The translations under genes and the position numbers were made by a program. Under the pieces are notes generated by a model that was given only the letters and a program-made list of their open reading frames with translations, did no database searches and was not told where the DNA came from. A DNA stretch of 60,631 bases, counting the filler, from Hausera hauseri (lineage: Eukaryota), in assembly GCA_046269625.1 (NCBI GenBank). It is 9 parts of 9 records of this genome, joined end to end, with 100 filler letters (N's around TTAATTAATTAA, not from the genome) between each part and the next. Parts side by side here need not be neighbours in the genome. Positions count along the whole stretch, not along the records: positions 1 to 4,875 come from JBJURY010407034.1; 8 more parts are not named here. One strand, 5' to 3'. Shown here piece by piece: positions 1 to 10,023 of this stretch. The first letter of the stretch is position 1. Each line of letters opens with the position of its first letter.

Positions 1-1695
1 AAAAACACAGCAGTGATGACCGCATCAGAGAATGGTCAACTGGATTGTGTTCGGTTACTGATACAGGCTGATGCTGACGTGAATACCTCAAATACAGACC
101 AGGAAACAGCTTTGACATTGGCAGTTAAAAGGGGACATGTAAACTGTGTCGATTGTTTGATGGATGCTGGTGCCAATGTCAACTGGAAAAATAAAAATGG
201 CGAGACACCGTTAATGATAGCTCTTGTTGAAAGAAATATTAAATGTGTCCACGCTATTCTTAGATTTTCACCCAATGTCAATATTGTCAACAAATCAGGG
301 ATGACAGCACTGATGATCGCCTCAGCCAACAATTTGCCCGACTGTCTGAGCTCTTTGATAACGCATGGTGCTGAGATTGATTATAGAAATGAAGAAGGTG
401 AGACGGCTTTACTGTTCGCTGCTAGGGAAGGAAACCATTCGTGTTTGAAATTTTTGATAGAAGTTGGAGCCAGTGTTAATGTGTTTGACAGGTATGGACG
501 GGCTCCTATAATGTACGCGTGTCAGAAAAGAAGTTTACAGTGTGCTGCAGAGATAATCAATGCCTGGGCTGAACTGGATGTTCTCGAAAGAAAACAGAAA
601 GAAATCCCATATAGTATCACAAATTTGAATTTAGAAATAATTGGAGATACAGCTCTAATTATGGCCGTTCGTGCTTGCAACCACAATCTTGTTGATTTAA
701 TACTTACAAAAGGTGCAAAGGTAAATCTTACGAATGAGAACAAAGAAACTGCGTTGATGGTTTCTGCCAGGGAAGGCGAATATCTCTGCCTGCGCCAATT
801 ACTTAAACGAGGTGCAAATGTCGACCTACAAAACCAACACGGACAGACAGCACTGATGATTGCTTCCAGTGGAAAATGTATTCATTGTTTCACAGCTTTA
901 TGCAAAAAAACCAGCAACATAAATCAAACCGACAATAACGGCAAAACAGCTCTAATGTTTTCTTTAAGGAGTGAACATAATTTAAACTTCATACCAGTCC
1001 TAGTACAAGCTGGGGCAAATGTTAATCAACCAGATAAGGATGGTCATACGTCTCTCATGATCGCCGCTTCACAAGGACGGTTGGAATGTCTTGAACTGTT
1101 GATTCGAGCTGGTGCCAATAAGTATCAGACAAACAATGAAGGAAATATCGCTCTAATAACTGCTCCTATCAACAAACAAAAGCTGTGTCTTTCTGCTCTT
1201 CTGCAAGAATTTGTTGGTGTAGATCTTGCTAACAATCATGATTTAACAGCTGTAATGTTATGTTGTCAGTATGACAGTTTAGAATGTCTGAATTCTCCCA
1301 CTGAAAAAGGCGCCAGTATCAATATGGCTGATCATGATGGCGTCACCCCATTGATGATTGCTGCATCCAGAGGAAATACAGGTTGTTTGCGCGCTTTGAT
1401 AAGTAACGGGGCTCACCTTAATTCAGTTGATAAAGCTGGAAGAACTGCACTTTTATCAGCGTTGTCAGAATGTCAGAAAACAAGTGCTCTGACACTGATA
1501 CAAGCTGGAGCGTGTGTAAATATAAAGTCTAATGATGGGGAAACAGCTTTGATAGCAGCTGCTGGTAACCGTCTCACAACATGTCTACAGCCATTATTAC
1601 ATTATGGGGCTGAGATTAACGCTGTTGACGTTCAGGGACAGAGCTGCTCGGAATTGTTGCTCAGAATCTTTGAATATTCTACTTCAAGCAGGTAG
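1..1695 (+). CDS. Ankyrin-repeat protein (5' partial, ~15-16 repeats; 3' end probably truncated)
   Basis: Repeated G-x-T-[AP]-L-[MIL]-x-A...G...C[LV]..L[IL]..GA.VN units over 560 aa. The frame is open to the window start. One more repeat (KDDKDWTALMHAV) follows out of frame at ~1705-1748. Confidence 0.92.
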   Translation, partial: KNTAVMTASENGQLDCVRLLIQADADVNTSNTDQETALTLAVKRGHVNCVDCLMDAGANVNWKNKNGETPLMIALVERNIKCVHAILRFSPNVNIVNKSGMTALMIASANNLPDCLSSLITHGAEIDYRNEEGETALLFAAREGNHSCLKFLIEVGASVNVFDRYGRAPIMYACQKRSLQCAAEIINAWAELDVLERKQKEIPYSITNLNLEIIGDTALIMAVRACNHNLVDLILTKGAKVNLTNENKETALMVSAREGEYLCLRQLLKRGANVDLQNQHGQTALMIASSGKCIHCFTALCKKTSNINQTDNNGKTALMFSLRSEHNLNFIPVLVQAGANVNQPDKDGHTSLMIAASQGRLECLELLIRAGANKYQTNNEGNIALITAPINKQKLCLSALLQEFVGVDLANNHDLTAVMLCCQYDSLECLNSPTEKGASINMADHDGVTPLMIAASRGNTGCLRALISNGAHLNSVDKAGRTALLSALSECQKTSALTLIQAGACVNIKSNDGETALIAAAGNRLTTCLQPLLHYGAEINAVDVQGQSCSELLLRIFEYSTSSR

Positions 1696-2049
1696 CAGTG
1701 TCCACATGAAAGATGATAAAGACTGGACAGCGTTAATGCATGCGGTGAACATTTTATATACTGATTTTAATTCAATTTGAGTTTCTATATGCGACAAAAA
1801 TCGGGCTGGAAGCTATTGAGGGTACAGATATTTTAAAGACATTTGGTATGAAATTAATGAAAACCGGCGTTTGTGGATCTCAAACGAAACAGACAGCAGC
1901 GGTGGCAACCATAGGAAAACCGGAAATTTGGAGGGTCTGTAGTTCTTGCTTAAATTCTGAACGATCATACAAGAATCTTTTTAAGTTTAAAGGAACCAAC
2001 ATTGTAGCTGACCTGATTTCTTCGTTGGCGTCATCCGGTACTTTTGTGC

Positions 2050-3250
2050 TTTTTTGTGTATTTGTGCTTTTGTTGCAAATTTTACGTGATAGATGCAAAC
2101 GATGTTACTTGTTTTTAAATCGGGGGTGTAAAATTTACAACCGATGCAGCAATTCTGAGCATTGTTGCCAAATTTTCTGTGATAGAACAGATAGATGACC
2201 GCGCAAGCGAAGGCGACCGTCTTTATCATTGATGAAATACATCAGGGGAAGCAGCCCTAGAAAAACGCCGTCGAGGCAGAGTTAATTCATTTAATTTCTC
2301 ATCTATATTATTAATTGTTTTTTGCAAAATTTCGTTTTCTGTGCGTAATTACGAAATTTGTTGCTGCAGCATTACATTTTGTTGTTGGTGGTTTGTTATT
2401 AATGCCGCAGAGACAGCTAGTGCTGTGTATGAGTGCAACACTTTATAGGCTTTGTCCGCCAGTTCGGCTAACTTTTCCAGTGCCGTTGAGTCCACGACCA
2501 TAGTGAACAAAGCTCTTATTTTAAGGGGCAATGCATTTAAAAAGTAACGACGAAGTTCTGGACTATGCTCAGATGTTACGCCAAGGGTATTGAGGTGAGA
2601 CAAAAATGTGCGAAAAAACTCAGAAGGTTTTTGAAGGCCCATGGCGTTGTCATTGAAGAACCTTTGAATGATAGAGTCGATTGACGGCTCAGTGAGCTTA
2701 AGAACGGCATTATAAAGTTGAGCATATGGATCGGTGTGGTGAAGAATGTCCATGATGTTTGTAATTTTAGTTTTGATAGAAGCAGGTAAATGAAAAAACA
2801 GGCTGTTGGTTTTGGATAAGGGGTCAACGACGTTTTGTGATTGGAGCCAGAATTTATGAAGTTTTAACCATGTTTGAGTAGAATTTTGCCTATCGAAGAA
2901 GTATTCTGTGCAGAGTGAATGAGTGGGGAGTGTGTGCTGTGTCGAAGTGTTTGAAGCACTTTGGGTAAGTAAGTAATAGAGATCGGTGGTTTGGTGGGTT
3001 TGTCCGTGGTATCAATAGCGAGTGATGAATCCATGTCACCACGGATGCGGAAGTGTATGTGAAGACAGATATTGGATGACAGCGATTGCAGAGTCCCAAC
3101 GAGAGTTACCGTGAAGCCGTAATGTGTGAGATAAAAGTCAGGTGAGCGAAGGAAAGTGGAGACAAAGTTATAGATTGCTGCAGTGTTTAAATGATACTGC
3201 ATTTGTGCAAATGTGTGTGTTATTTAAGAAAAAGAATAGGAAATAAAGAG
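2050..3250 (-). pseudogene. Ty3/Gypsy family A Ubl-gag remnant (copy 1)
   Basis: Fragmented ORFs are homologous to 23087-24200 and 26079-27200 (FWLQS, YNAVLKLTEP, RRYFLNALP.IRAL, LEKLAELADK, YYH.KF...A..C..GC). They are preceded by FYLTHYG...LHIHFRIRGD-M. Confidence 0.85.
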
Positions 3251-3800
3251 AGGTCGTGTGGCCGGGGGCGTGTCGCGGGGCGGCATCGAAGAGTTCCGTC
3301 TGACCCAATGGTATAGGGTGAGCGGCCACGGCTTCAGTCTCGCCGTGACGGGCCGCAAACTGCGGGGTAGCCGAGGTCCACGCTTTTTTCGCTGTCTTTT
3401 GGAGGACTTTAACTCTTCCAAAACCGTCTTTGGATTGGTATGCAGCGATGAGTCCGGGTTGAATAAATGCGGCATTAACACCATGGACATTATGACGATG
3501 GCTGTAATAACTGTTTCCATTTAATTCGACCTGCAGATAACCGCATTTGAGTGTTTCAGTAGAACTCTCTGCAGAATGATTAAAAACACGGATGTAAAAA
3601 TGACTTGGATTGTCAAAGTATAATATCCTAAATTTGATGTACCCCTTATTCGGAAGGACAGGTTTATCAACTTTCAGTTGAAGAACATAACGTAGAGGAC
3701 ATGATGGTAAAATGCATTCACCATACACTTTTATTCGCAGACATATTTTGTCCACACTCTGACTTTGCCTTAGCGAGTTAAAAGTCGACTGCTTTGTCAT
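3168..3800 (-). pseudogene. TDRD12-like (CCCH + extended Tudor) fragment upstream of Ubl-gag
   Basis: CLRIKVYGEC....CPLRY...D...LP.KGYIKF.I....NPSHFYIR...YY...PGLIAA......F.RVKVL...KAW follows my recollection of the TDRD12 region after the helicase domain. NPSHFY[IV]R is a classic extended-Tudor N-terminal strand. Confidence 0.65.
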
Positions 3801-4273
3801 TTAACCAATCTGGTTTCTTACAGTCACATCGACTTAGAACCAAGCGTACACAGTAAACATTCTTTGGACTGAATGCATTCGGATTCAGAAAGATGTTGGA
3901 ATGACAAAGAGATGTCTTTTTGGTTTTGGATTTAGATACTGGTAAGAATGGGAGTTTAGAAAATCTGTCTCTCAGGAAATTTAATCGTCGACCGAATGTT
4001 TCTTCTGTAACATCGACGTGAAGCCATGTATGTGCGTTATATATCGATATCGCAGTTTGTCCAAGAGCTTCATCCGAAATTAAAAAAACGGGCATTTTAA
4101 ATGGTTTATACTGGGAAAATTCAGGTGAAGCAATTATAAAACAAAAGTTTTGTAAAGACCGTCTAACGGCAGCAAGTTTAAGATTCCCAAATGAGAAGAA
4201 TATGAATATTACCTTCGTGAAAAAATTCTTGTCCAACATGCAAACGTCCGAGCAGCACATGTCGAAAAAAATT

Positions 4274-4284
4274 TTCTGACACCA
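4274..4284 (-). promoter_or_regulatory. Candidate primer-binding site (tRNA-Leu type) of family A copy 1
   Basis: The minus strand reads TGGTGTCAGAA, identical to the first 11 nt of the PBS at 19924. It is correctly oriented ~1.2 kb upstream of gag. There is no clean LTR-terminal CA immediately before it. Confidence 0.5.
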
Positions 4285-4875
4285 TTTATTATGATTGAAC
4301 TGGTAGTTGATCGTCCCCGAACGAACGAACAAAAGAAGGGTTTTAGAGATCGTCTTTGTAGAATGCTTTTAAAATCCCCTAGATATCCGATCGGTATGTT
4401 GTGATGCCAATATCTCATTACGTTCTGTGTAATATCATAGGCCACTGGGAACCGACAGTTATCCTTAGATACCTCCGTGTTTGTAAATTAGGATGTGAAA
4501 ATATGTCGAATGGTACAGTTTTGAAGCTGATTTGTGAAAACCAAATTCGTACAGGAATTTTTCAATAATTATGGCCAAAAAATACAACAATTTTCTGTAT
4601 TAAATCAGACTGATGTAAAAGTGAATGTGGCGAAATACACAAAGTTCCACGAAACGACCAAAATATTCCAACTGCAGTCCAATGTTTAAGTTGGTAAAAC
4701 GTCAAAAATATGGCTCATCTAATTTCAAAAAATGCTAATATTCTTTATTTGAATAAACTCTTTTTACTCTATTTAAACAATTGTGAAAATAAAACTAAAA
4801 TCTACAATCTTGAATTTATGAACTATTGACCCATTTAACCATGATAAACCCAATGTTAAATTTCGTCGAATATCA

Positions 4876-7090: not shown

Positions 7091-7428
7091 GCACAACGCT
7101 GATTATTGCCATATTGCAATGGCGCAGTACTATGGCGCCACAACGCTGCACGGTAAACGGGCCTATAAATGTCTCGCTTGTTCTATAGTTGATGAAATCA
7201 ACTACGAACAATTTTATAATAAGCACAAGGACACTTGAACCAGTTCCAGAGGTCCAAAAAGGAAATATTGATGGAGGCAGCAAATGCAGTATTCGTTCAA
7301 CAAGCAGAAAACGTCAAGTATCAACAAATCTTGACGAATACCTGCAAAGCAGCAACAGAGAGCATTAGCTGCAGCAGGAGCAGTAGGAAACGCCCATTAC
7401 TGTCACGTACGACCTAAACAGATCGTAC

Positions 7429-10023
7429 GTGGACATAAAAGTAAATGTGTTATTGTTGGAGCAGGCAAAAGAATTCCATTATGTGGCCGTGACGAATTTG
7501 CACCGACTGTTGAACATGGACCATCATCAGTTTATCGAAAAGCGTATACGTTGTAAATGGTGTCCTCTATGTTTACATGGCTTCAGATCAGAAACCAAGT
7601 GGGAAAAAAATGTGACGCTGTGCAGAGAGAATGCATCAGGAACAACAATGTACGTCATGCCAGTCAAAAAGGATCTGCGATTTAGTGACTGGTCTAAAAT
7701 GGACATCCAGCATATGCGGTACATGCCGATATTAAGGCAATCCTAACACGGTACGACGTATACGATCAAAAACATGTTCCAATCGCCGTCGGGATGTTGG
7801 TTCTTCCAACAAAAGCTGTAGGTCAACCGCCGTATTACATGTTTCACGGCTGGGACTGTGTGTGTGATTTTCTGCATCAATTGGAAACAATAGTTAAATC
7901 GGAAATCGCACCGTGGTATCTCAATAGCAGCACAAAACCCCTGTTTTGGACAGATGAAGACGAAAGCCTGACGTTTGCAGTCACACAGGAATGTTATCTA
8001 TGCCGCAAAATATTACCGTTTGATGCACAAGAATGGCTCGTACCAAATCATGATTATTTTAGTGGTTTATTCCTAGGAGCATTATGCAATTCATGAAATT
8101 TGCCAAGGCGTGTGCGGCCATTCATACCAATGATTTTTCATAATATCCGAGGTTAAGATTGTCACCATATATTCAAATGGGCCATCAACGGATTTCCGCA
8201 CTGGGAACTGTCAATAATCCCAACAACAATGGAGAAGTACCTGTCCCTGTCAGCACGCATAAACCGGTTCCAGGTACGCTTCCTTGATTCATTGCAATTT
8301 CTCAATGAATCACTGATGAAGGTGGCAAATGCCTCGACGGATGTGCCAATAACGTCAGCGCAGTTCCCACATATTGCAAGCAGCAAAGACGTATTTCCAT
8401 ATGACTTTGCAACATCATATGAGCAACAGCAGAGGAATTACCGCCGCGATGGACATGCATCACAGAAATTGAATATTGGAGAGCACAAGAATATTGGACA
8501 GAACTCGGCTGTAGAAACATGTTGGAGTACATGCTCCAATATCGCAAACTGGACGCGTACTTATTGGCCGATGTGTTCTAAGCATTTGTGACGAAAGAGT
8601 TGTCTCAAGATAGGCGGGAGCCACTCAACTTTTATTCCATATCGGGAATGATTTGGACTTCAGCTCTAATATCACTTGATGGAGACATTAAGCTGCAGCA
8701 AGACCCGGAAATGTACCGGCTGCTTGATGTTGGTATTCGCGGTGGCATGACTTTTGTCAAAAAACATCAGGTCACTGCTACAGATACCACATCACTGCTG
8801 TATATTGATATTAATTACCTGTAAGACTGGGCGCTCTCGCAGCTCTTGCCGTACGGTTCATTTGAATGGGTAGTCGACAGACAAGATCTGGACGACATAA
8901 TGCTTAATTTACCACGAGCAGATATGGCAAGCTCAGTCTAACACCTGATGGAGGTCGATATCGTGGTACCAGGTGATCTGCATGACGTTTTGAACAATTT
9001 ACCAGTCGCACCATTTAACCATGTCCCCTAGGCACAAAAGTGAAGAAACTGCTCATGACGCAGGAACCGAAGCTGAATTACGTGGTCCATTGGTGCCTGC
9101 TACAGTTCTACATGTAGTTGGTTGTACACGTAACATGGCTGCATCGTGCAATCCGATTTGCTCAGACTCACATATTCAAGGTGTACATAGATGGAAATTA
9201 GGAGAAACAAATCGCAGCTTGAACAAAGTTCGAAAAGGACTACTACAAGCTGAAAAACAATTCCCTGTACGGAAAAAGCAGTGGAGAATCTAAAAAAGCG
9301 GCCCAATGTAAGCCTATGCAATAGCGAAAGGCGGTTAATAACGTACCCGAGTAAGGCGAATGTTCGGCGGTCAATGCACATTACCAATGGATTGGTTACT
9401 ATACTGTTAAACCGAGAAGGCGTGGTTCTGAATCGGCCAAGTTGCATCGGACAAGTGGTATGGAAGCTGAACAAATTGCGCATGTGCGAGCTCCAGTATC
9501 ACGACTTGGCACATTACCGGCAAATGTTCGACGGCTGTGAGATAAACATCGTTGCCGGTAACACAGACAGCTTTTTCCTTCAGCTGAAAACTTCAATTGA
9601 GATCAACTGCTCCGACAAATAATGACAGATGAATTACTGGACACGTCAAACTACCTACAGAACCATCCTCTGTACAGCAGCGTGATAACAAACAAAATCG
9701 GCTGCTTTAATGACTAAAGTGAAGGCCGGGTTAAATACATGGAATGGATATTTTTGCGCCCAAAGTGCTACAGTTTTTTGACGGACTGTAGGCCGAAAAT
9801 GCGGGCAAAGGGCATCCGGCTGAAACAGACGGAAATAAATCACGGTGATTATCGCCGTGTCTATGATGAACAAGAAGAAGAAAAAGGAAATGTTGTTGTG
9901 TCTCAAACGACCATACGATCGATTGAGTACCAGCTGTATACCATCACAAATAGAAAGGTTGCTTTGTCATGCAACGATGACAAGCGAAAGTGGGTGGGGC
10001 GAAATAAGAGTTGGGCGTATGGG
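7429..10023 (+). pseudogene. Protein-primed family B DNA polymerase of Maverick/Polinton type (with endonuclease-VII-like insert), multiply disrupted
   Basis: Motifs across frames: HYVAV.NL.RLL, CPLCL, YAD, CYLC...NHD.FSG.F.GA.CN, FHN.RG, EKYLS, RFLDSLQFL, VFPYDF, LLADVF, GIRGG, LYIDINYL, KLKNNSLYGK, NTDSFF, LRPKCYS, KGI, LS.NDDKR...AYG. Confidence 0.9.

What the first reader, a model, noticed from the sequence alone, without database searches (positions are those of the whole stretch)
3372..3752. LTR retrotransposon apparently carrying a piece of the piRNA-pathway gene TDRD12
Seen: a CCCH-like + extended-Tudor peptide lies on the element strand between a candidate PBS (4274-4284) and the Ubl-Gag, and its ORF runs directly into the start of the Ubl. 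Established: TDRD12 and the Yb/BoYb/SoYb family are needed for piRNA-mediated transposon silencing, and Tudor domains bind PIWI proteins. Inference: the element captured an intron-less fragment of its own silencing machinery. It could act as a dominant-negative decoy, or cause piRNAs to target the host TDRD12 mRNA. The TDRD12 match is from remembered sequence pattern only.
Basis: partly seen in the sequence, partly recalled or inferred. Interest (0 to 1): 0.85.

Follow-up and report, generated by a model that had tools for sequence, protein, structure and literature searches.

The report
Dead retrotransposon carrying TDRD12-like gene fragment
The Tudor-like peptide is real: it is the remnant of a TDRD12-like (helicase + Tudor) host-type gene piece carried between the primer-binding site and gag of a decayed Ty3/gypsy-type LTR retrotransposon family present in dozens to hundreds of copies. 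Nothing shows that the piece still works or ever acted against silencing.

Summary
Confirmed. Window 3372-3752 (minus strand) encodes a CCCH-like motif plus the N-terminal ~60% of an extended Tudor domain. It is part of a repeat: 46 matches listed, 598 first-look candidates, 77-91% identity. Longer copies add a DEAD-box helicase upstream and zinc knuckles, protease, RT, RNase H and integrase downstream, so this is a Ty3/gypsy-type LTR retrotransposon. The window has a 5' LTR (about 4779-4287) and a PBS-like site (4284-4273).

A search of 1.84 billion proteins with a sister copy found ten weak hits. Five of the six long hits sit in clusters annotated TDRD12, and each alignment spans helicase C-terminus, CCCH-like motif and Tudor start. 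A copy with the complete domain passes Pfam's TUDOR threshold.

Some copies also carry, fused in frame, a PP2A scaffold (PR65) fragment.

The window copy lacks most of the helicase, the Tudor C-half and the PP2A piece, and is truncated at 2061. Copies decay as expected without selection. The TDRD12-like part shows little or no coding constraint, unlike gag, and deletion forms predominate.

No separate host TDRD12 gene was found. Capture is supported; a decoy or piRNA role is not. Precedent exists: Drosophila telomeric elements captured nxf2, piwi and aub.

The parts
4287..4779 (-). 5' LTR of the window's element (about 490 bp; begins TGTTTAAAT..., ends ...CATAATA)
   Evidence: Alignment of 11 copies. 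Four copies (L045, L043, L052, L051) share the unit but have unrelated sequence beyond its 3' end; only L045 also shows an unrelated 5' flank. About a dozen copies exist in the genome. No element with both LTRs was recovered.
4273..4284 (-). Primer-binding-site-like sequence TGGTGTCAGAAA, 2 nt after the LTR end
   Evidence: Position and conservation in L041, L011, L002 and L009. Many more copies share sequence from here downstream. Complementarity to a tRNA of this genome was not tested.
4130..4272 (-). Conserved leader, shared with copies that carry the full helicase (window 4234-4130 = L032 480-583)
4100..4130 (-). Deletion junction: about 1.4 kb of helicase (L032 583-1977) is missing in the window's subfamily
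   Evidence: The subfamily is shared with L002, L009, L011 and L037.
3801..4100 (-). C-terminal remnant of the TDRD12-like helicase domain (frame of ORF 3778-4332). It is shifted out of frame from the Tudor ORF near 3790.
   Evidence: Aligned to TDRD12 helicase-C. L036 has both parts in one 345-aa ORF.
3372..3752 (-). The finding: CCCH-like motif plus the N-terminal ~60% of an extended Tudor domain
   Evidence: A low-confidence fold model of the complete domain best matches eTudor structures.
3381..3385 (-). Deletion junction: about 530 bp (Tudor C-half plus a PP2A-A/PR65 HEAT fragment) present in long-form copies is missing here
   Evidence: PP2A-A identity E=1e-36.
3250..3380 (-). G+C-rich tail of the subfamily-specific block, ending the ORF at 3168
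   Evidence: continuous with the PP2A piece in L058. The second gag copy in L034 has a different upstream reading from about here (read off the ORF translations; nucleotide match ends at window 3063).
2864..3202 (-).
   Evidence: No Pfam or PDB hit. Mild coding-constraint signal: 0.47-0.52 in frame against 0.69-0.81 off frame.
2349..2753 (-). gag-like ORF
   Evidence: Coding constraint among copies: 0.41-0.45 in frame against 0.72-1.15 off frame. 916 first-look candidates in the genome. No Pfam family.
2061..2348 (-). Cys/His knuckle region of gag. The element is truncated at 2061, where other copies continue into PR-RT-RH-IN.

Best explanation
Window 2061-4779 (minus strand) is one dead, rearranged copy of a Ty3/gypsy-type LTR retrotransposon family.

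An ancestor of one subfamily acquired an uninterrupted, sense-oriented block of cellular coding sequence between its leader and gag. The block held a TDRD12-like segment (pre-helicase region, DEAD-box helicase, CCCH-like motif, extended Tudor up to the DYGS strand). In most long copies this is fused in frame to HEAT repeats about 11-14 of the PP2A scaffold subunit.

The likeliest route is the standard one for retroelements: reverse-transcriptase template switching onto co-packaged cellular mRNA. This step is inferred, not shown.

The block then travelled as a passenger upstream ORF. Internal-deletion derivatives amplified at least as well as the full form. After insertion the copies decayed as expected without selection.

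The window copy retains only the helicase C-terminal stub and the first ~60% of the Tudor domain. It is frameshifted between the two, lacks pol, and cannot make a TDRD12-like protein. Any present effect could only be at the RNA level.
For: Repeat family:
- 46 matches listed, 598 candidates, 77-91% identity.
- 20 fetched copies are collinear across the 3385 junction and at least 8 carry the extra ~530 bp.

LTR-retrotransposon identity:
- Pfam RVT_1 1e-15, RT_RNaseH_2 7e-27, weaker sub-threshold matches to rve (24.5 bits, cut-off 32.6) and gag-asp_proteas (19.0 bits, cut-off 28.2) on L034/L036, in the order PR-RT-RH-IN.
- The LTR 3' boundary is shared by copies with unrelated sequence beyond it, and the PBS-like site lies 2 nt after it.

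TDRD12 affinity:
- phmmer of L036:5009-5794:- against 1.84e9 proteins gave 10 hits.
- Five of the six long hits sit in clusters annotated TDRD12 (Anabrus, Tachypleus, Ostrinia and, through a cluster member, Manduca; one unannotated Logan protein has the DEAD+Tudor+CS architecture), and the sixth (Nezara) is annotated only as RNA helicase. E values run from 1.5e-5 to 5e-4, and one alignment spans residues 10-226.
- The best hit of horseshoe-crab TDRD12 in this genome is a copy of the element, E=3.5e-25.
- Pfam DEAD hits on the upstream ORFs.
- TUDOR above threshold on the complete copy.
- Atlas nearest cluster is Tudor/zf-CCCH, score 0.92.

PP2A piece: E=1.2e-36 to PR65 residues about 393-515.

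Passenger or decay:
- pN/pS for Tudor is 0.60-0.61 in frame against 0.67-0.85 off frame. For helicase-C it is 0.73-0.76 against 0.58-0.66. For gag it is 0.41-0.45 against 0.72-1.15.
- Only 8 of 31 copies keep the 123-codon Tudor stretch free of stops and frameshifts, and the copies I translated are broken at different places.
- The tree is star-like with terminal branches of about 0.04-0.06.
Against: - No element with two LTRs was recovered, and no target-site duplication was seen.
- No intact host TDRD12 gene was found, so the donor is unknown. Horizontal arrival of an already chimeric element cannot be excluded.
- The PP2A piece is only 51% identical to the host PP2A-A exon.
- Because the copies I translated break at different places, the founder probably had one long open frame (about 900 codons, with an in-frame TDRD12-PP2A fusion). 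That is more than a pure passenger needs.
- The Tudor stretch shows a faint in-frame signal in the 11-copy set (0.60 against 0.74-0.85).
- TDRD12 similarity is low (26-29% identity, E about 1e-5).
Confidence: 0.7

Rival explanations
1. Anti-silencing cargo. The captured TDRD12-like block was, or is, kept because it helps the element. It could act as a truncated helicase-Tudor protein that titrates PIWI partners. Or, as in TART-nxf2, it could be a source of piRNAs that hit the host TDRD12 transcript.
For: The cargo is a piRNA-pathway-type gene. Repeated capture of nxf2, piwi and aub by Drosophila telomeric retrotransposons is documented, with piRNA evidence (PMC13534243). The founder ORF was probably long and open, with an in-frame fusion. 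There is a faint in-frame constraint signal on the Tudor stretch.
Against: Deletion forms lacking the Tudor C-half or the helicase are the commoner copies. There is no constraint on the helicase-C part and far less than on gag overall. No host TDRD12 with high nucleotide identity was found. The only copy found outside the gypsy-element context (L075) is 84% identical, frameshifted and itself repeated. No RNA run is available.
Confidence: 0.15
2. The block is not a capture in this host. The chimeric element arrived by horizontal transfer, or the block is an old element-encoded accessory ORF whose likeness to TDRD12 reflects distant common ancestry.
For: The TE-borne PP2A piece is about as far from the host PP2A-A (51%) as from the human protein (about 56% by my count from the alignment). 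No host TDRD12 was found. There are no close relatives among 1.84e9 protein representatives; the best identity is 31%.
Against: The TE piece and the host PP2A-A share derived residues against human (AIIEL, TTLC, RMICL), read. Two unrelated cellular genes fused in one ORF is typical of capture, not of an ancestral element gene. The assembly is too fragmented to show absence of a host gene.
Confidence: 0.1
3. Host exon or assembly artefact: a single host Tudor exon next to an inserted element, or a chimeric contig.
For: The assembly is very fragmented (909,086 contigs). The window's element is joined at 2061 to other short repeats and an ankyrin gene.
Against: The same Tudor-to-gag and leader-to-helicase-stub junctions recur in many independent contigs. 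There are no splice-site-bounded exon copies.
Confidence: 0.03

Closest known systems
Capture of piRNA-pathway gene fragments (nxf2, piwi, aub) by Drosophila telomeric non-LTR retrotransposons (TART and relatives; Ellison et al. 2020 as cited in PMC13534243)
   Same: A retrotransposon carries a piece of a transposon-silencing gene in many copies.
   Different: Those are LINE-like elements with 140-235 bp fragments at 76-95% nucleotide identity to a known host gene, and with piRNA evidence. Here it is a Ty3/gypsy-type LTR element with about 1.7 kb of TDRD12-like coding sequence plus a PP2A piece read as one upstream ORF. No identified host donor, no RNA data, and the cargo is often deleted.
Gene capture by LTR retrotransposons in plants (rice and sorghum survey PMC3726574, title and abstract seen; maize Bs1, from my own knowledge)
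   Same: Cellular gene fragments with no interruption in the reading frame sit between the LTRs, chimeric ORFs form, and they amplify with the element.
   Different: This cargo looks like an animal-type gene (best named matches are arthropod TDRD12), though the host was not identified. The cargo sits in the leader upstream of gag of an element that still had a full pol.
Additional ORFs captured by bdelloid rotifer LTR retrotransposons (PMC5408684; title and abstract seen)
   Same: An extra ORF besides gag and pol in animal LTR elements.
   Different: The paper's details were not read, so no closer comparison is made here.
TDRD12 / Yb-BoYb-SoYb family (DEAD-box helicase flanked by Tudor domains, C-terminal CS domain)
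   Same: The order helicase, CCCH-like motif, extended Tudor. The helicase motifs read as degenerate (SRKGKT for motif I, LDDAE for motif II; read directly from the ORFs, not compared with a reference). The named best hits.
   Different: Only a fragment. No N-terminal Tudor and no CS domain. The Tudor is cut at its DYGS strand and fused to PP2A-A. Only 26-29% identity.
Acute transforming retroviruses (oncogene capture; my own knowledge)
   Same: Capture of spliced cellular coding sequence by a retroelement, giving fusion ORFs and defective derivatives.
   Different: No evidence here of selection for the cargo's activity.

Membership tests
Ty3/gypsy-type LTR retrotransposon | pol with protease, RT, RNase H and integrase in that order | tested here: met
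   On sister copies L034 and L036: RVT_1 and RT_RNaseH/RT_RNaseH_2 above the Pfam cut-offs, gag-asp_proteas and rve below them, in that order. The window copy itself is truncated before pol.
Ty3/gypsy-type LTR retrotransposon | Long terminal repeats flanking the element | tested here: inconclusive
   A ~490-bp unit upstream of the PBS also occurs on its own: four copies have unrelated sequence beyond its 3' end, one of them (L045) also at the 5' end. No contig holds both LTRs of one element, and no TSD was seen.
Ty3/gypsy-type LTR retrotransposon | tRNA primer-binding site next to the 5' LTR | tested here: inconclusive
   TGGTGTCAGAAA lies 2 nt after the LTR end and is conserved in five copies. 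The matching tRNA was not sought. Its likeness to a tRNA-Leu 3' end is from memory.
Ty3/gypsy-type LTR retrotransposon | gag with Cys/His knuckle | tested here: inconclusive
   Read directly: the gag-like ORF is followed by CYYH...C and CIYH...C motifs. No Pfam gag family matched. Coding constraint is present.
TDRD12 / Yb family | DEAD-box helicase core | tested here: met
   Pfam DEAD 1e-5 to 1.5e-6 on sister copies; one of the three ORFs reaches the 26-bit cut-off (28.5 bits), the others score 25.5 and 24.6. Tachypleus TDRD12 residues 72-366 match C411922 at E=3.5e-25. In the window only the C-terminal stub remains.
TDRD12 / Yb family | CCCH-like motif and extended Tudor directly after the helicase | tested here: met
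   Collinear alignments to TDRD12 of Tachypleus and Anabrus. Nearly invariant C, G, C, C columns.
TDRD12 / Yb family | Named best hits in an unbiased search are TDRD12 | tested here: met
   though E is only 1e-5 to 5e-4 at 26-29% identity.
TDRD12 / Yb family | N-terminal Tudor and C-terminal CS domain (full-length architecture) | tested here: not met
   Neither is present in any copy examined. It is a fragment, not a TDRD12 gene.
Extended Tudor domain (Pfam PF00567) | Score above Pfam's gathering threshold | tested here: met
   The complete copy L075 scores 27.4 bits against a 23-bit cut-off. The window's truncated copy scores 17.3 bits, below the cut-off.
Extended Tudor domain (Pfam PF00567) | eTudor fold | tested here: inconclusive
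   The AF2 model has mean pLDDT 53. The top Foldseek hits are eTudor domains of Krimper, TDRD2, TDRD1 and Papi, but TM is only 0.25-0.29.
Extended Tudor domain (Pfam PF00567) | Aromatic cage for methyl-arginine binding | not tested
   Not examined. The window copy lacks the C-terminal half of the domain in any case.
PP2A scaffold subunit A (PR65) | HEAT repeats matching PR65 | tested here: met
   Sister copies only: E=1.2e-36 to PR65 residues about 393-515. Absent from the window (deleted at 3381-3385).
TE anti-silencing by captured piRNA-pathway gene (TART-nxf2 type) | Captured piece nearly identical in nucleotides to an expressed host gene | tested here: not met
   No host TDRD12 was found. 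The nearest sequence found outside the gypsy-element context, L075, is 84% identical, frameshifted and itself part of a repeat.
TE anti-silencing by captured piRNA-pathway gene (TART-nxf2 type) | piRNAs from the captured piece that target the host gene | not testable with these tools
   No RNA run holds the sequence.

The most novel reading that the evidence does not exclude
The founder element encoded a roughly 900-codon upstream ORF. It would have fused a TDRD12-like helicase-Tudor fragment to PP2A scaffold HEAT repeats and acted as a retrotransposon-encoded inhibitor of the host piRNA pathway, whether as a protein decoy or as a piRNA trigger. If so, this would be the first such case I know of for an LTR element and for TDRD12.
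Probability: 0.12. Interest if true: 0.85.

Novelty: new member of a known kind. Interest (0 to 1): 0.5.

Why it matters
Retrotransposons that pick up pieces of the machinery that silences them are known so far mainly from Drosophila telomeric LINE-like elements. A Ty3/gypsy-type family carrying a large TDRD12-like helicase-Tudor block would extend this to another element class, another pathway gene and probably another animal lineage. It would also offer a natural series of deletion variants for testing whether such cargo helps the element. As it stands, the evidence shows capture and decay, not function. For annotation, these copies should not be called Tudor, helicase or PP2A genes.

Tried and rejected
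- PDB sequence search with the window ORF: no hit.
- Ankyrin ORF homology search, run to learn the organism: only generic ~30% ankyrin hits, uninformative.
- 'Ubl' reading of ORF 2864-3202: no Pfam or PDB support.
- LTR pair search within the 9-10 kb contigs: none. The only direct repeat in L034 is two gag regions 7.3 kb apart, which are two elements.
- L075 (C40666) as the host parent exon: rejected as shown. It is frameshifted. Both its flanks are repeats, and an upstream ORF matches Peptidase_C48. It does not fall outside the TE copies in the tree.
- L072 as host TDRD12: it reads as an ordinary DEAD-box helicase, DDX5-like by its motifs (my reading of the ORF; no family search was run).
- Host TDRD12 search with two arthropod TDRD12 proteins: apart from generic Tudor-domain loci matching the conserved C-terminal Tudor of the query, every match checked was a copy of the element or a generic DEAD-box helicase.
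- Reads: one DNA run of short contigs only. It gives no joints and no RNA, and its depth is not a copy number.
- Fold model: low confidence, so it is used only as weak support.
- Closed or exhausted tools: the search of earlier findings and the look-up of encoding contigs were closed.
All searches used natural copies.

Full report
**The sequence.** The piece (1-4875) has a 560-aa ankyrin-repeat ORF on the + strand (13-1695). On the minus strand it has a series of ORFs, including 3778-4332, 3168-3800, 2864-3202 and 2349-2753. The finding's peptide is residues 17-143 of ORF 3168-3800. Pfam gives a sub-threshold TUDOR match: residues 51-136, profile 3-76 of 121, E=0.005, 17.3 bits against a 23-bit cut-off. 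PDB sequences give nothing.

**It is a repeat.** The 633-bp ORF has 46 listed matches (598 first-look candidates) in the window's own 868-Mb, 909,086-contig assembly, at 77-91% identity.
- Aligning 29 fetched copies to the window shows that homology runs from window 4100 to 2061 in most copies.
- Twenty copies are collinear across position 3385.
- At least eight have about 530 extra bases exactly at 3381-3385.
- A few copies (L002, L009, L011, L037) also share the window's sequence upstream of 4100.

**What the longer copies show.**
- Upstream of the Tudor part, L031, L032 and L033 carry ORFs with Pfam DEAD matches (1e-5 to 1.5e-6, one above the cut-off) and readable helicase motifs.
- The extra 530 bases complete the Tudor domain up to its DYGS strand. 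They then continue in frame into a sequence that matches the PP2A scaffold subunit PR65, residues about 393-515, at E=1.2e-36.
- Downstream of the gag-like ORF, the 9-10 kb contigs L034, L035 and L036 continue into Cys/His knuckles, an aspartic protease, RVT_1, RT_RNaseH/RT_RNaseH_2 and an integrase core. All of these are broken into several ORFs.
- The family is therefore a Ty3/gypsy-type LTR retrotransposon. The window copy stops at 2061, just after the knuckles.

**LTR and PBS.** Window 4779-4287 behaves as a separate unit. About a dozen copies exist. Four (L045, L043, L052, L051) have unrelated sequence beyond its 3' end, one of them (L045) also beyond its 5' end, and all end within a few bases of the same 3' position. 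In copies that continue into the element, AA then TGGTGTCAGAAA (window 4284-4273) follows. Sequence from about 4296 downstream is shared by many more copies. Window 4234-4130 corresponds to L032 480-583, whereas window 4100 corresponds to L032 1977. So the window's subfamily has lost about 1.4 kb of helicase. I did not recover an element with both LTRs or a target-site duplication.

**Is it TDRD12-like?** I used a natural sister ORF that reads helicase C-terminus, linker and Tudor start in one frame (L036:5009-5794:-, 262 aa). HMMER compared it with 1.84 billion representative proteins.
- Ten proteins reached E<=1e-3.
- Five of the six long ones sit in clusters annotated 'putative ATP-dependent RNA helicase TDRD12' (Anabrus, Tachypleus, Ostrinia and, through a cluster member, Manduca; one unannotated Logan protein has the same architecture). 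The sixth, from Nezara, is annotated only as RNA helicase.
- Two of the six (P0007, P0008) show DEAD + Tudor + CS; the others show DEAD with or without Tudor.
- Each aligns in one stretch to query residues about 10-226.
- BLASTP shows the collinear features: the helicase-C motif, a C-x6-G-x-C-x4-C-x2-RH motif, 'D-K-P-x-LP', and the first Tudor strands.
- These columns are nearly invariant in the joint alignment.
- Conversely, the best match of Tachypleus TDRD12 in this genome is a copy of the element (E=3.5e-25, residues 72-366).
- A copy with the whole Tudor domain (L075) passes Pfam's TUDOR threshold at 27.4 bits.
- Its nearest ESM-Atlas cluster is 'Tudor domain-containing protein' with zf-CCCH in 14% of members, score 0.92.
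- An AlphaFold model of that domain is poor (pLDDT 53). Its top PDB matches are nevertheless almost all extended Tudor domains of piRNA-pathway proteins, at low TM. I count this as weak support only.

Identity to TDRD12 is only 26-29%. There is no N-terminal Tudor and no CS domain. It is a fragment of a TDRD12-like gene, not a TDRD12 gene.

**Donor genes.**
- Two arthropod TDRD12 queries hit only copies of the element in their TDRD12-specific regions. Otherwise they hit generic DEAD-box helicases (for example L072, which reads as DDX5-like) or generic Tudor genes.
- The host PP2A-A gene is represented by L064, a single 247-codon open stretch, E=1e-99 to PR65. It is only 51% identical to the TE-borne piece, which is about 56% identical to human PR65 by my count.
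- The TE piece shares some derived residues with the host gene and some ancestral ones with human. So the capture is old, or came from a paralogue or another genome.
- L075 (C40666) holds the TDRD12-like segment from mid-helicase to beyond the Tudor domain, without PP2A.
- L075 is frameshifted. It is preceded by a Peptidase_C48-like ORF (Ulp1-type cysteine protease). Both its flanks are repeats, and C902036 repeats the arrangement.
- In a tree L075 is a weakly supported, long-branched sister of the long-form clade, not an outgroup.
- It is therefore not shown to be the parent gene.

**State of the copies.**
- Pairwise Nei-Gojobori ratios, with the two wrong frames as controls:

| Region | In frame | Off frame |
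|---|---|---|
| Tudor | 0.60-0.61 | 0.67-0.85 |
| Helicase-C stub | 0.73-0.76 | 0.58-0.66 |
| gag | 0.41-0.45 | 0.72-1.15 |
| ORF 2864-3202 | 0.47-0.52 | 0.69-0.81 |

- Seventeen of 31 copies have no stop in the 123 Tudor codons. Only 8 of 31 have neither a stop nor a frameshift. This is about what roughly 5% divergence per copy would give without selection.
- The copies I translated break at different places. Single ORFs of 313-367 aa survive in different copies. So the founder probably had one long open frame through helicase, Tudor and PP2A. I did not reconstruct it.
- Deletion derivatives are the majority.

**Interpretation.**
- *Shown:* an LTR-retrotransposon family carries a TDRD12-like block (in long-form copies also a PP2A-A-like piece) between leader and gag, on the element's strand, in many copies.
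- *Shown:* the window copy is a doubly deleted, frameshifted, 3'-truncated relic.
- *Inferred:* acquisition by template switching onto cellular mRNA, and passenger status.
- *Not supported:* that the block is or was a decoy, or a piRNA trigger against the host TDRD12. There is no donor gene, no RNA data, weak or absent constraint, and frequent loss of the cargo.

**Comparison with what is known.** The idea has a clear precedent. Drosophila telomeric retrotransposons repeatedly captured nxf2, piwi and aub fragments that yield piRNAs against the host genes (PMC13534243). Gene capture by LTR retrotransposons is well known in plants (PMC3726574), and extra ORFs are known in rotifer LTR elements (PMC5408684). 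I found no paper linking TDRD12 to capture by an LTR element.

Noticed in passing
window 13-1695 (+): A 560-aa ankyrin-repeat ORF that probably runs off the contig start, with 10-12 repeats (Pfam Ank_2, 3e-113). It has paralogues at about 72% nucleotide identity elsewhere in the genome (C304634, C57109). It is not part of the retrotransposon.
   Followed up: partly
window 1796-1937 and 1938-2041: Two adjacent short, very high-copy repeats (about 140 bp at 83-88% and about 104 bp at 92-96% identity; 682 first-look candidates). They sit exactly where the retrotransposon copy is truncated at 2061.
   Followed up: partly
L031/L032/L033/L030/L058 (e.g. L027:1891-2298:+): Long-form copies carry an in-frame fragment of the PP2A scaffold subunit PR65 (HEAT repeats about 11-14) fused to the cut Tudor domain. 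This is a second captured cellular gene in the same element.
   Followed up: yes
L075 (G000:C40666) 1-3885; also C902036: A different repeated arrangement: a Peptidase_C48 (Ulp1-like) ORF, then the TDRD12-like segment from mid-helicase with a complete Tudor domain and no PP2A, then another abundant repeat. It could be the source, an older form or a rearrangement; this is unresolved.
   Followed up: partly
window 2864-3202 (-) and equivalents (L034:8272-8835:-): A conserved ORF just upstream of gag that ends in an ...H-F-R-I-R-G-G-like motif, recalling the ubiquitin C-terminus. It shows mild coding constraint but has no Pfam or PDB match. Its nature is unknown.
   Followed up: partly
L064 (G000:C170388) 1-921 (-): The presumed host PP2A-A gene reads residues about 302-547 of PR65 in one uninterrupted stretch. 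A DDX5-like helicase (L072) likewise has a 336-codon open stretch. Exons in this genome seem long.
   Followed up: no
L034 (G000:C254402) 3-1145 and 7343-8458: Two gag regions of the family lie 7.3 kb apart in the same orientation (82% identity). The second has a different sequence upstream of the '...LNN' point, so it may be a relative without the TDRD12-like block.
   Followed up: partly
window about 4551 (LTR): The window, L009 and L042 lack an ~80-bp segment of the LTR that is present in L045, L046, L041, L011 and L002. L046, L011 and L009 also share sequence upstream of the LTR start.
   Followed up: no
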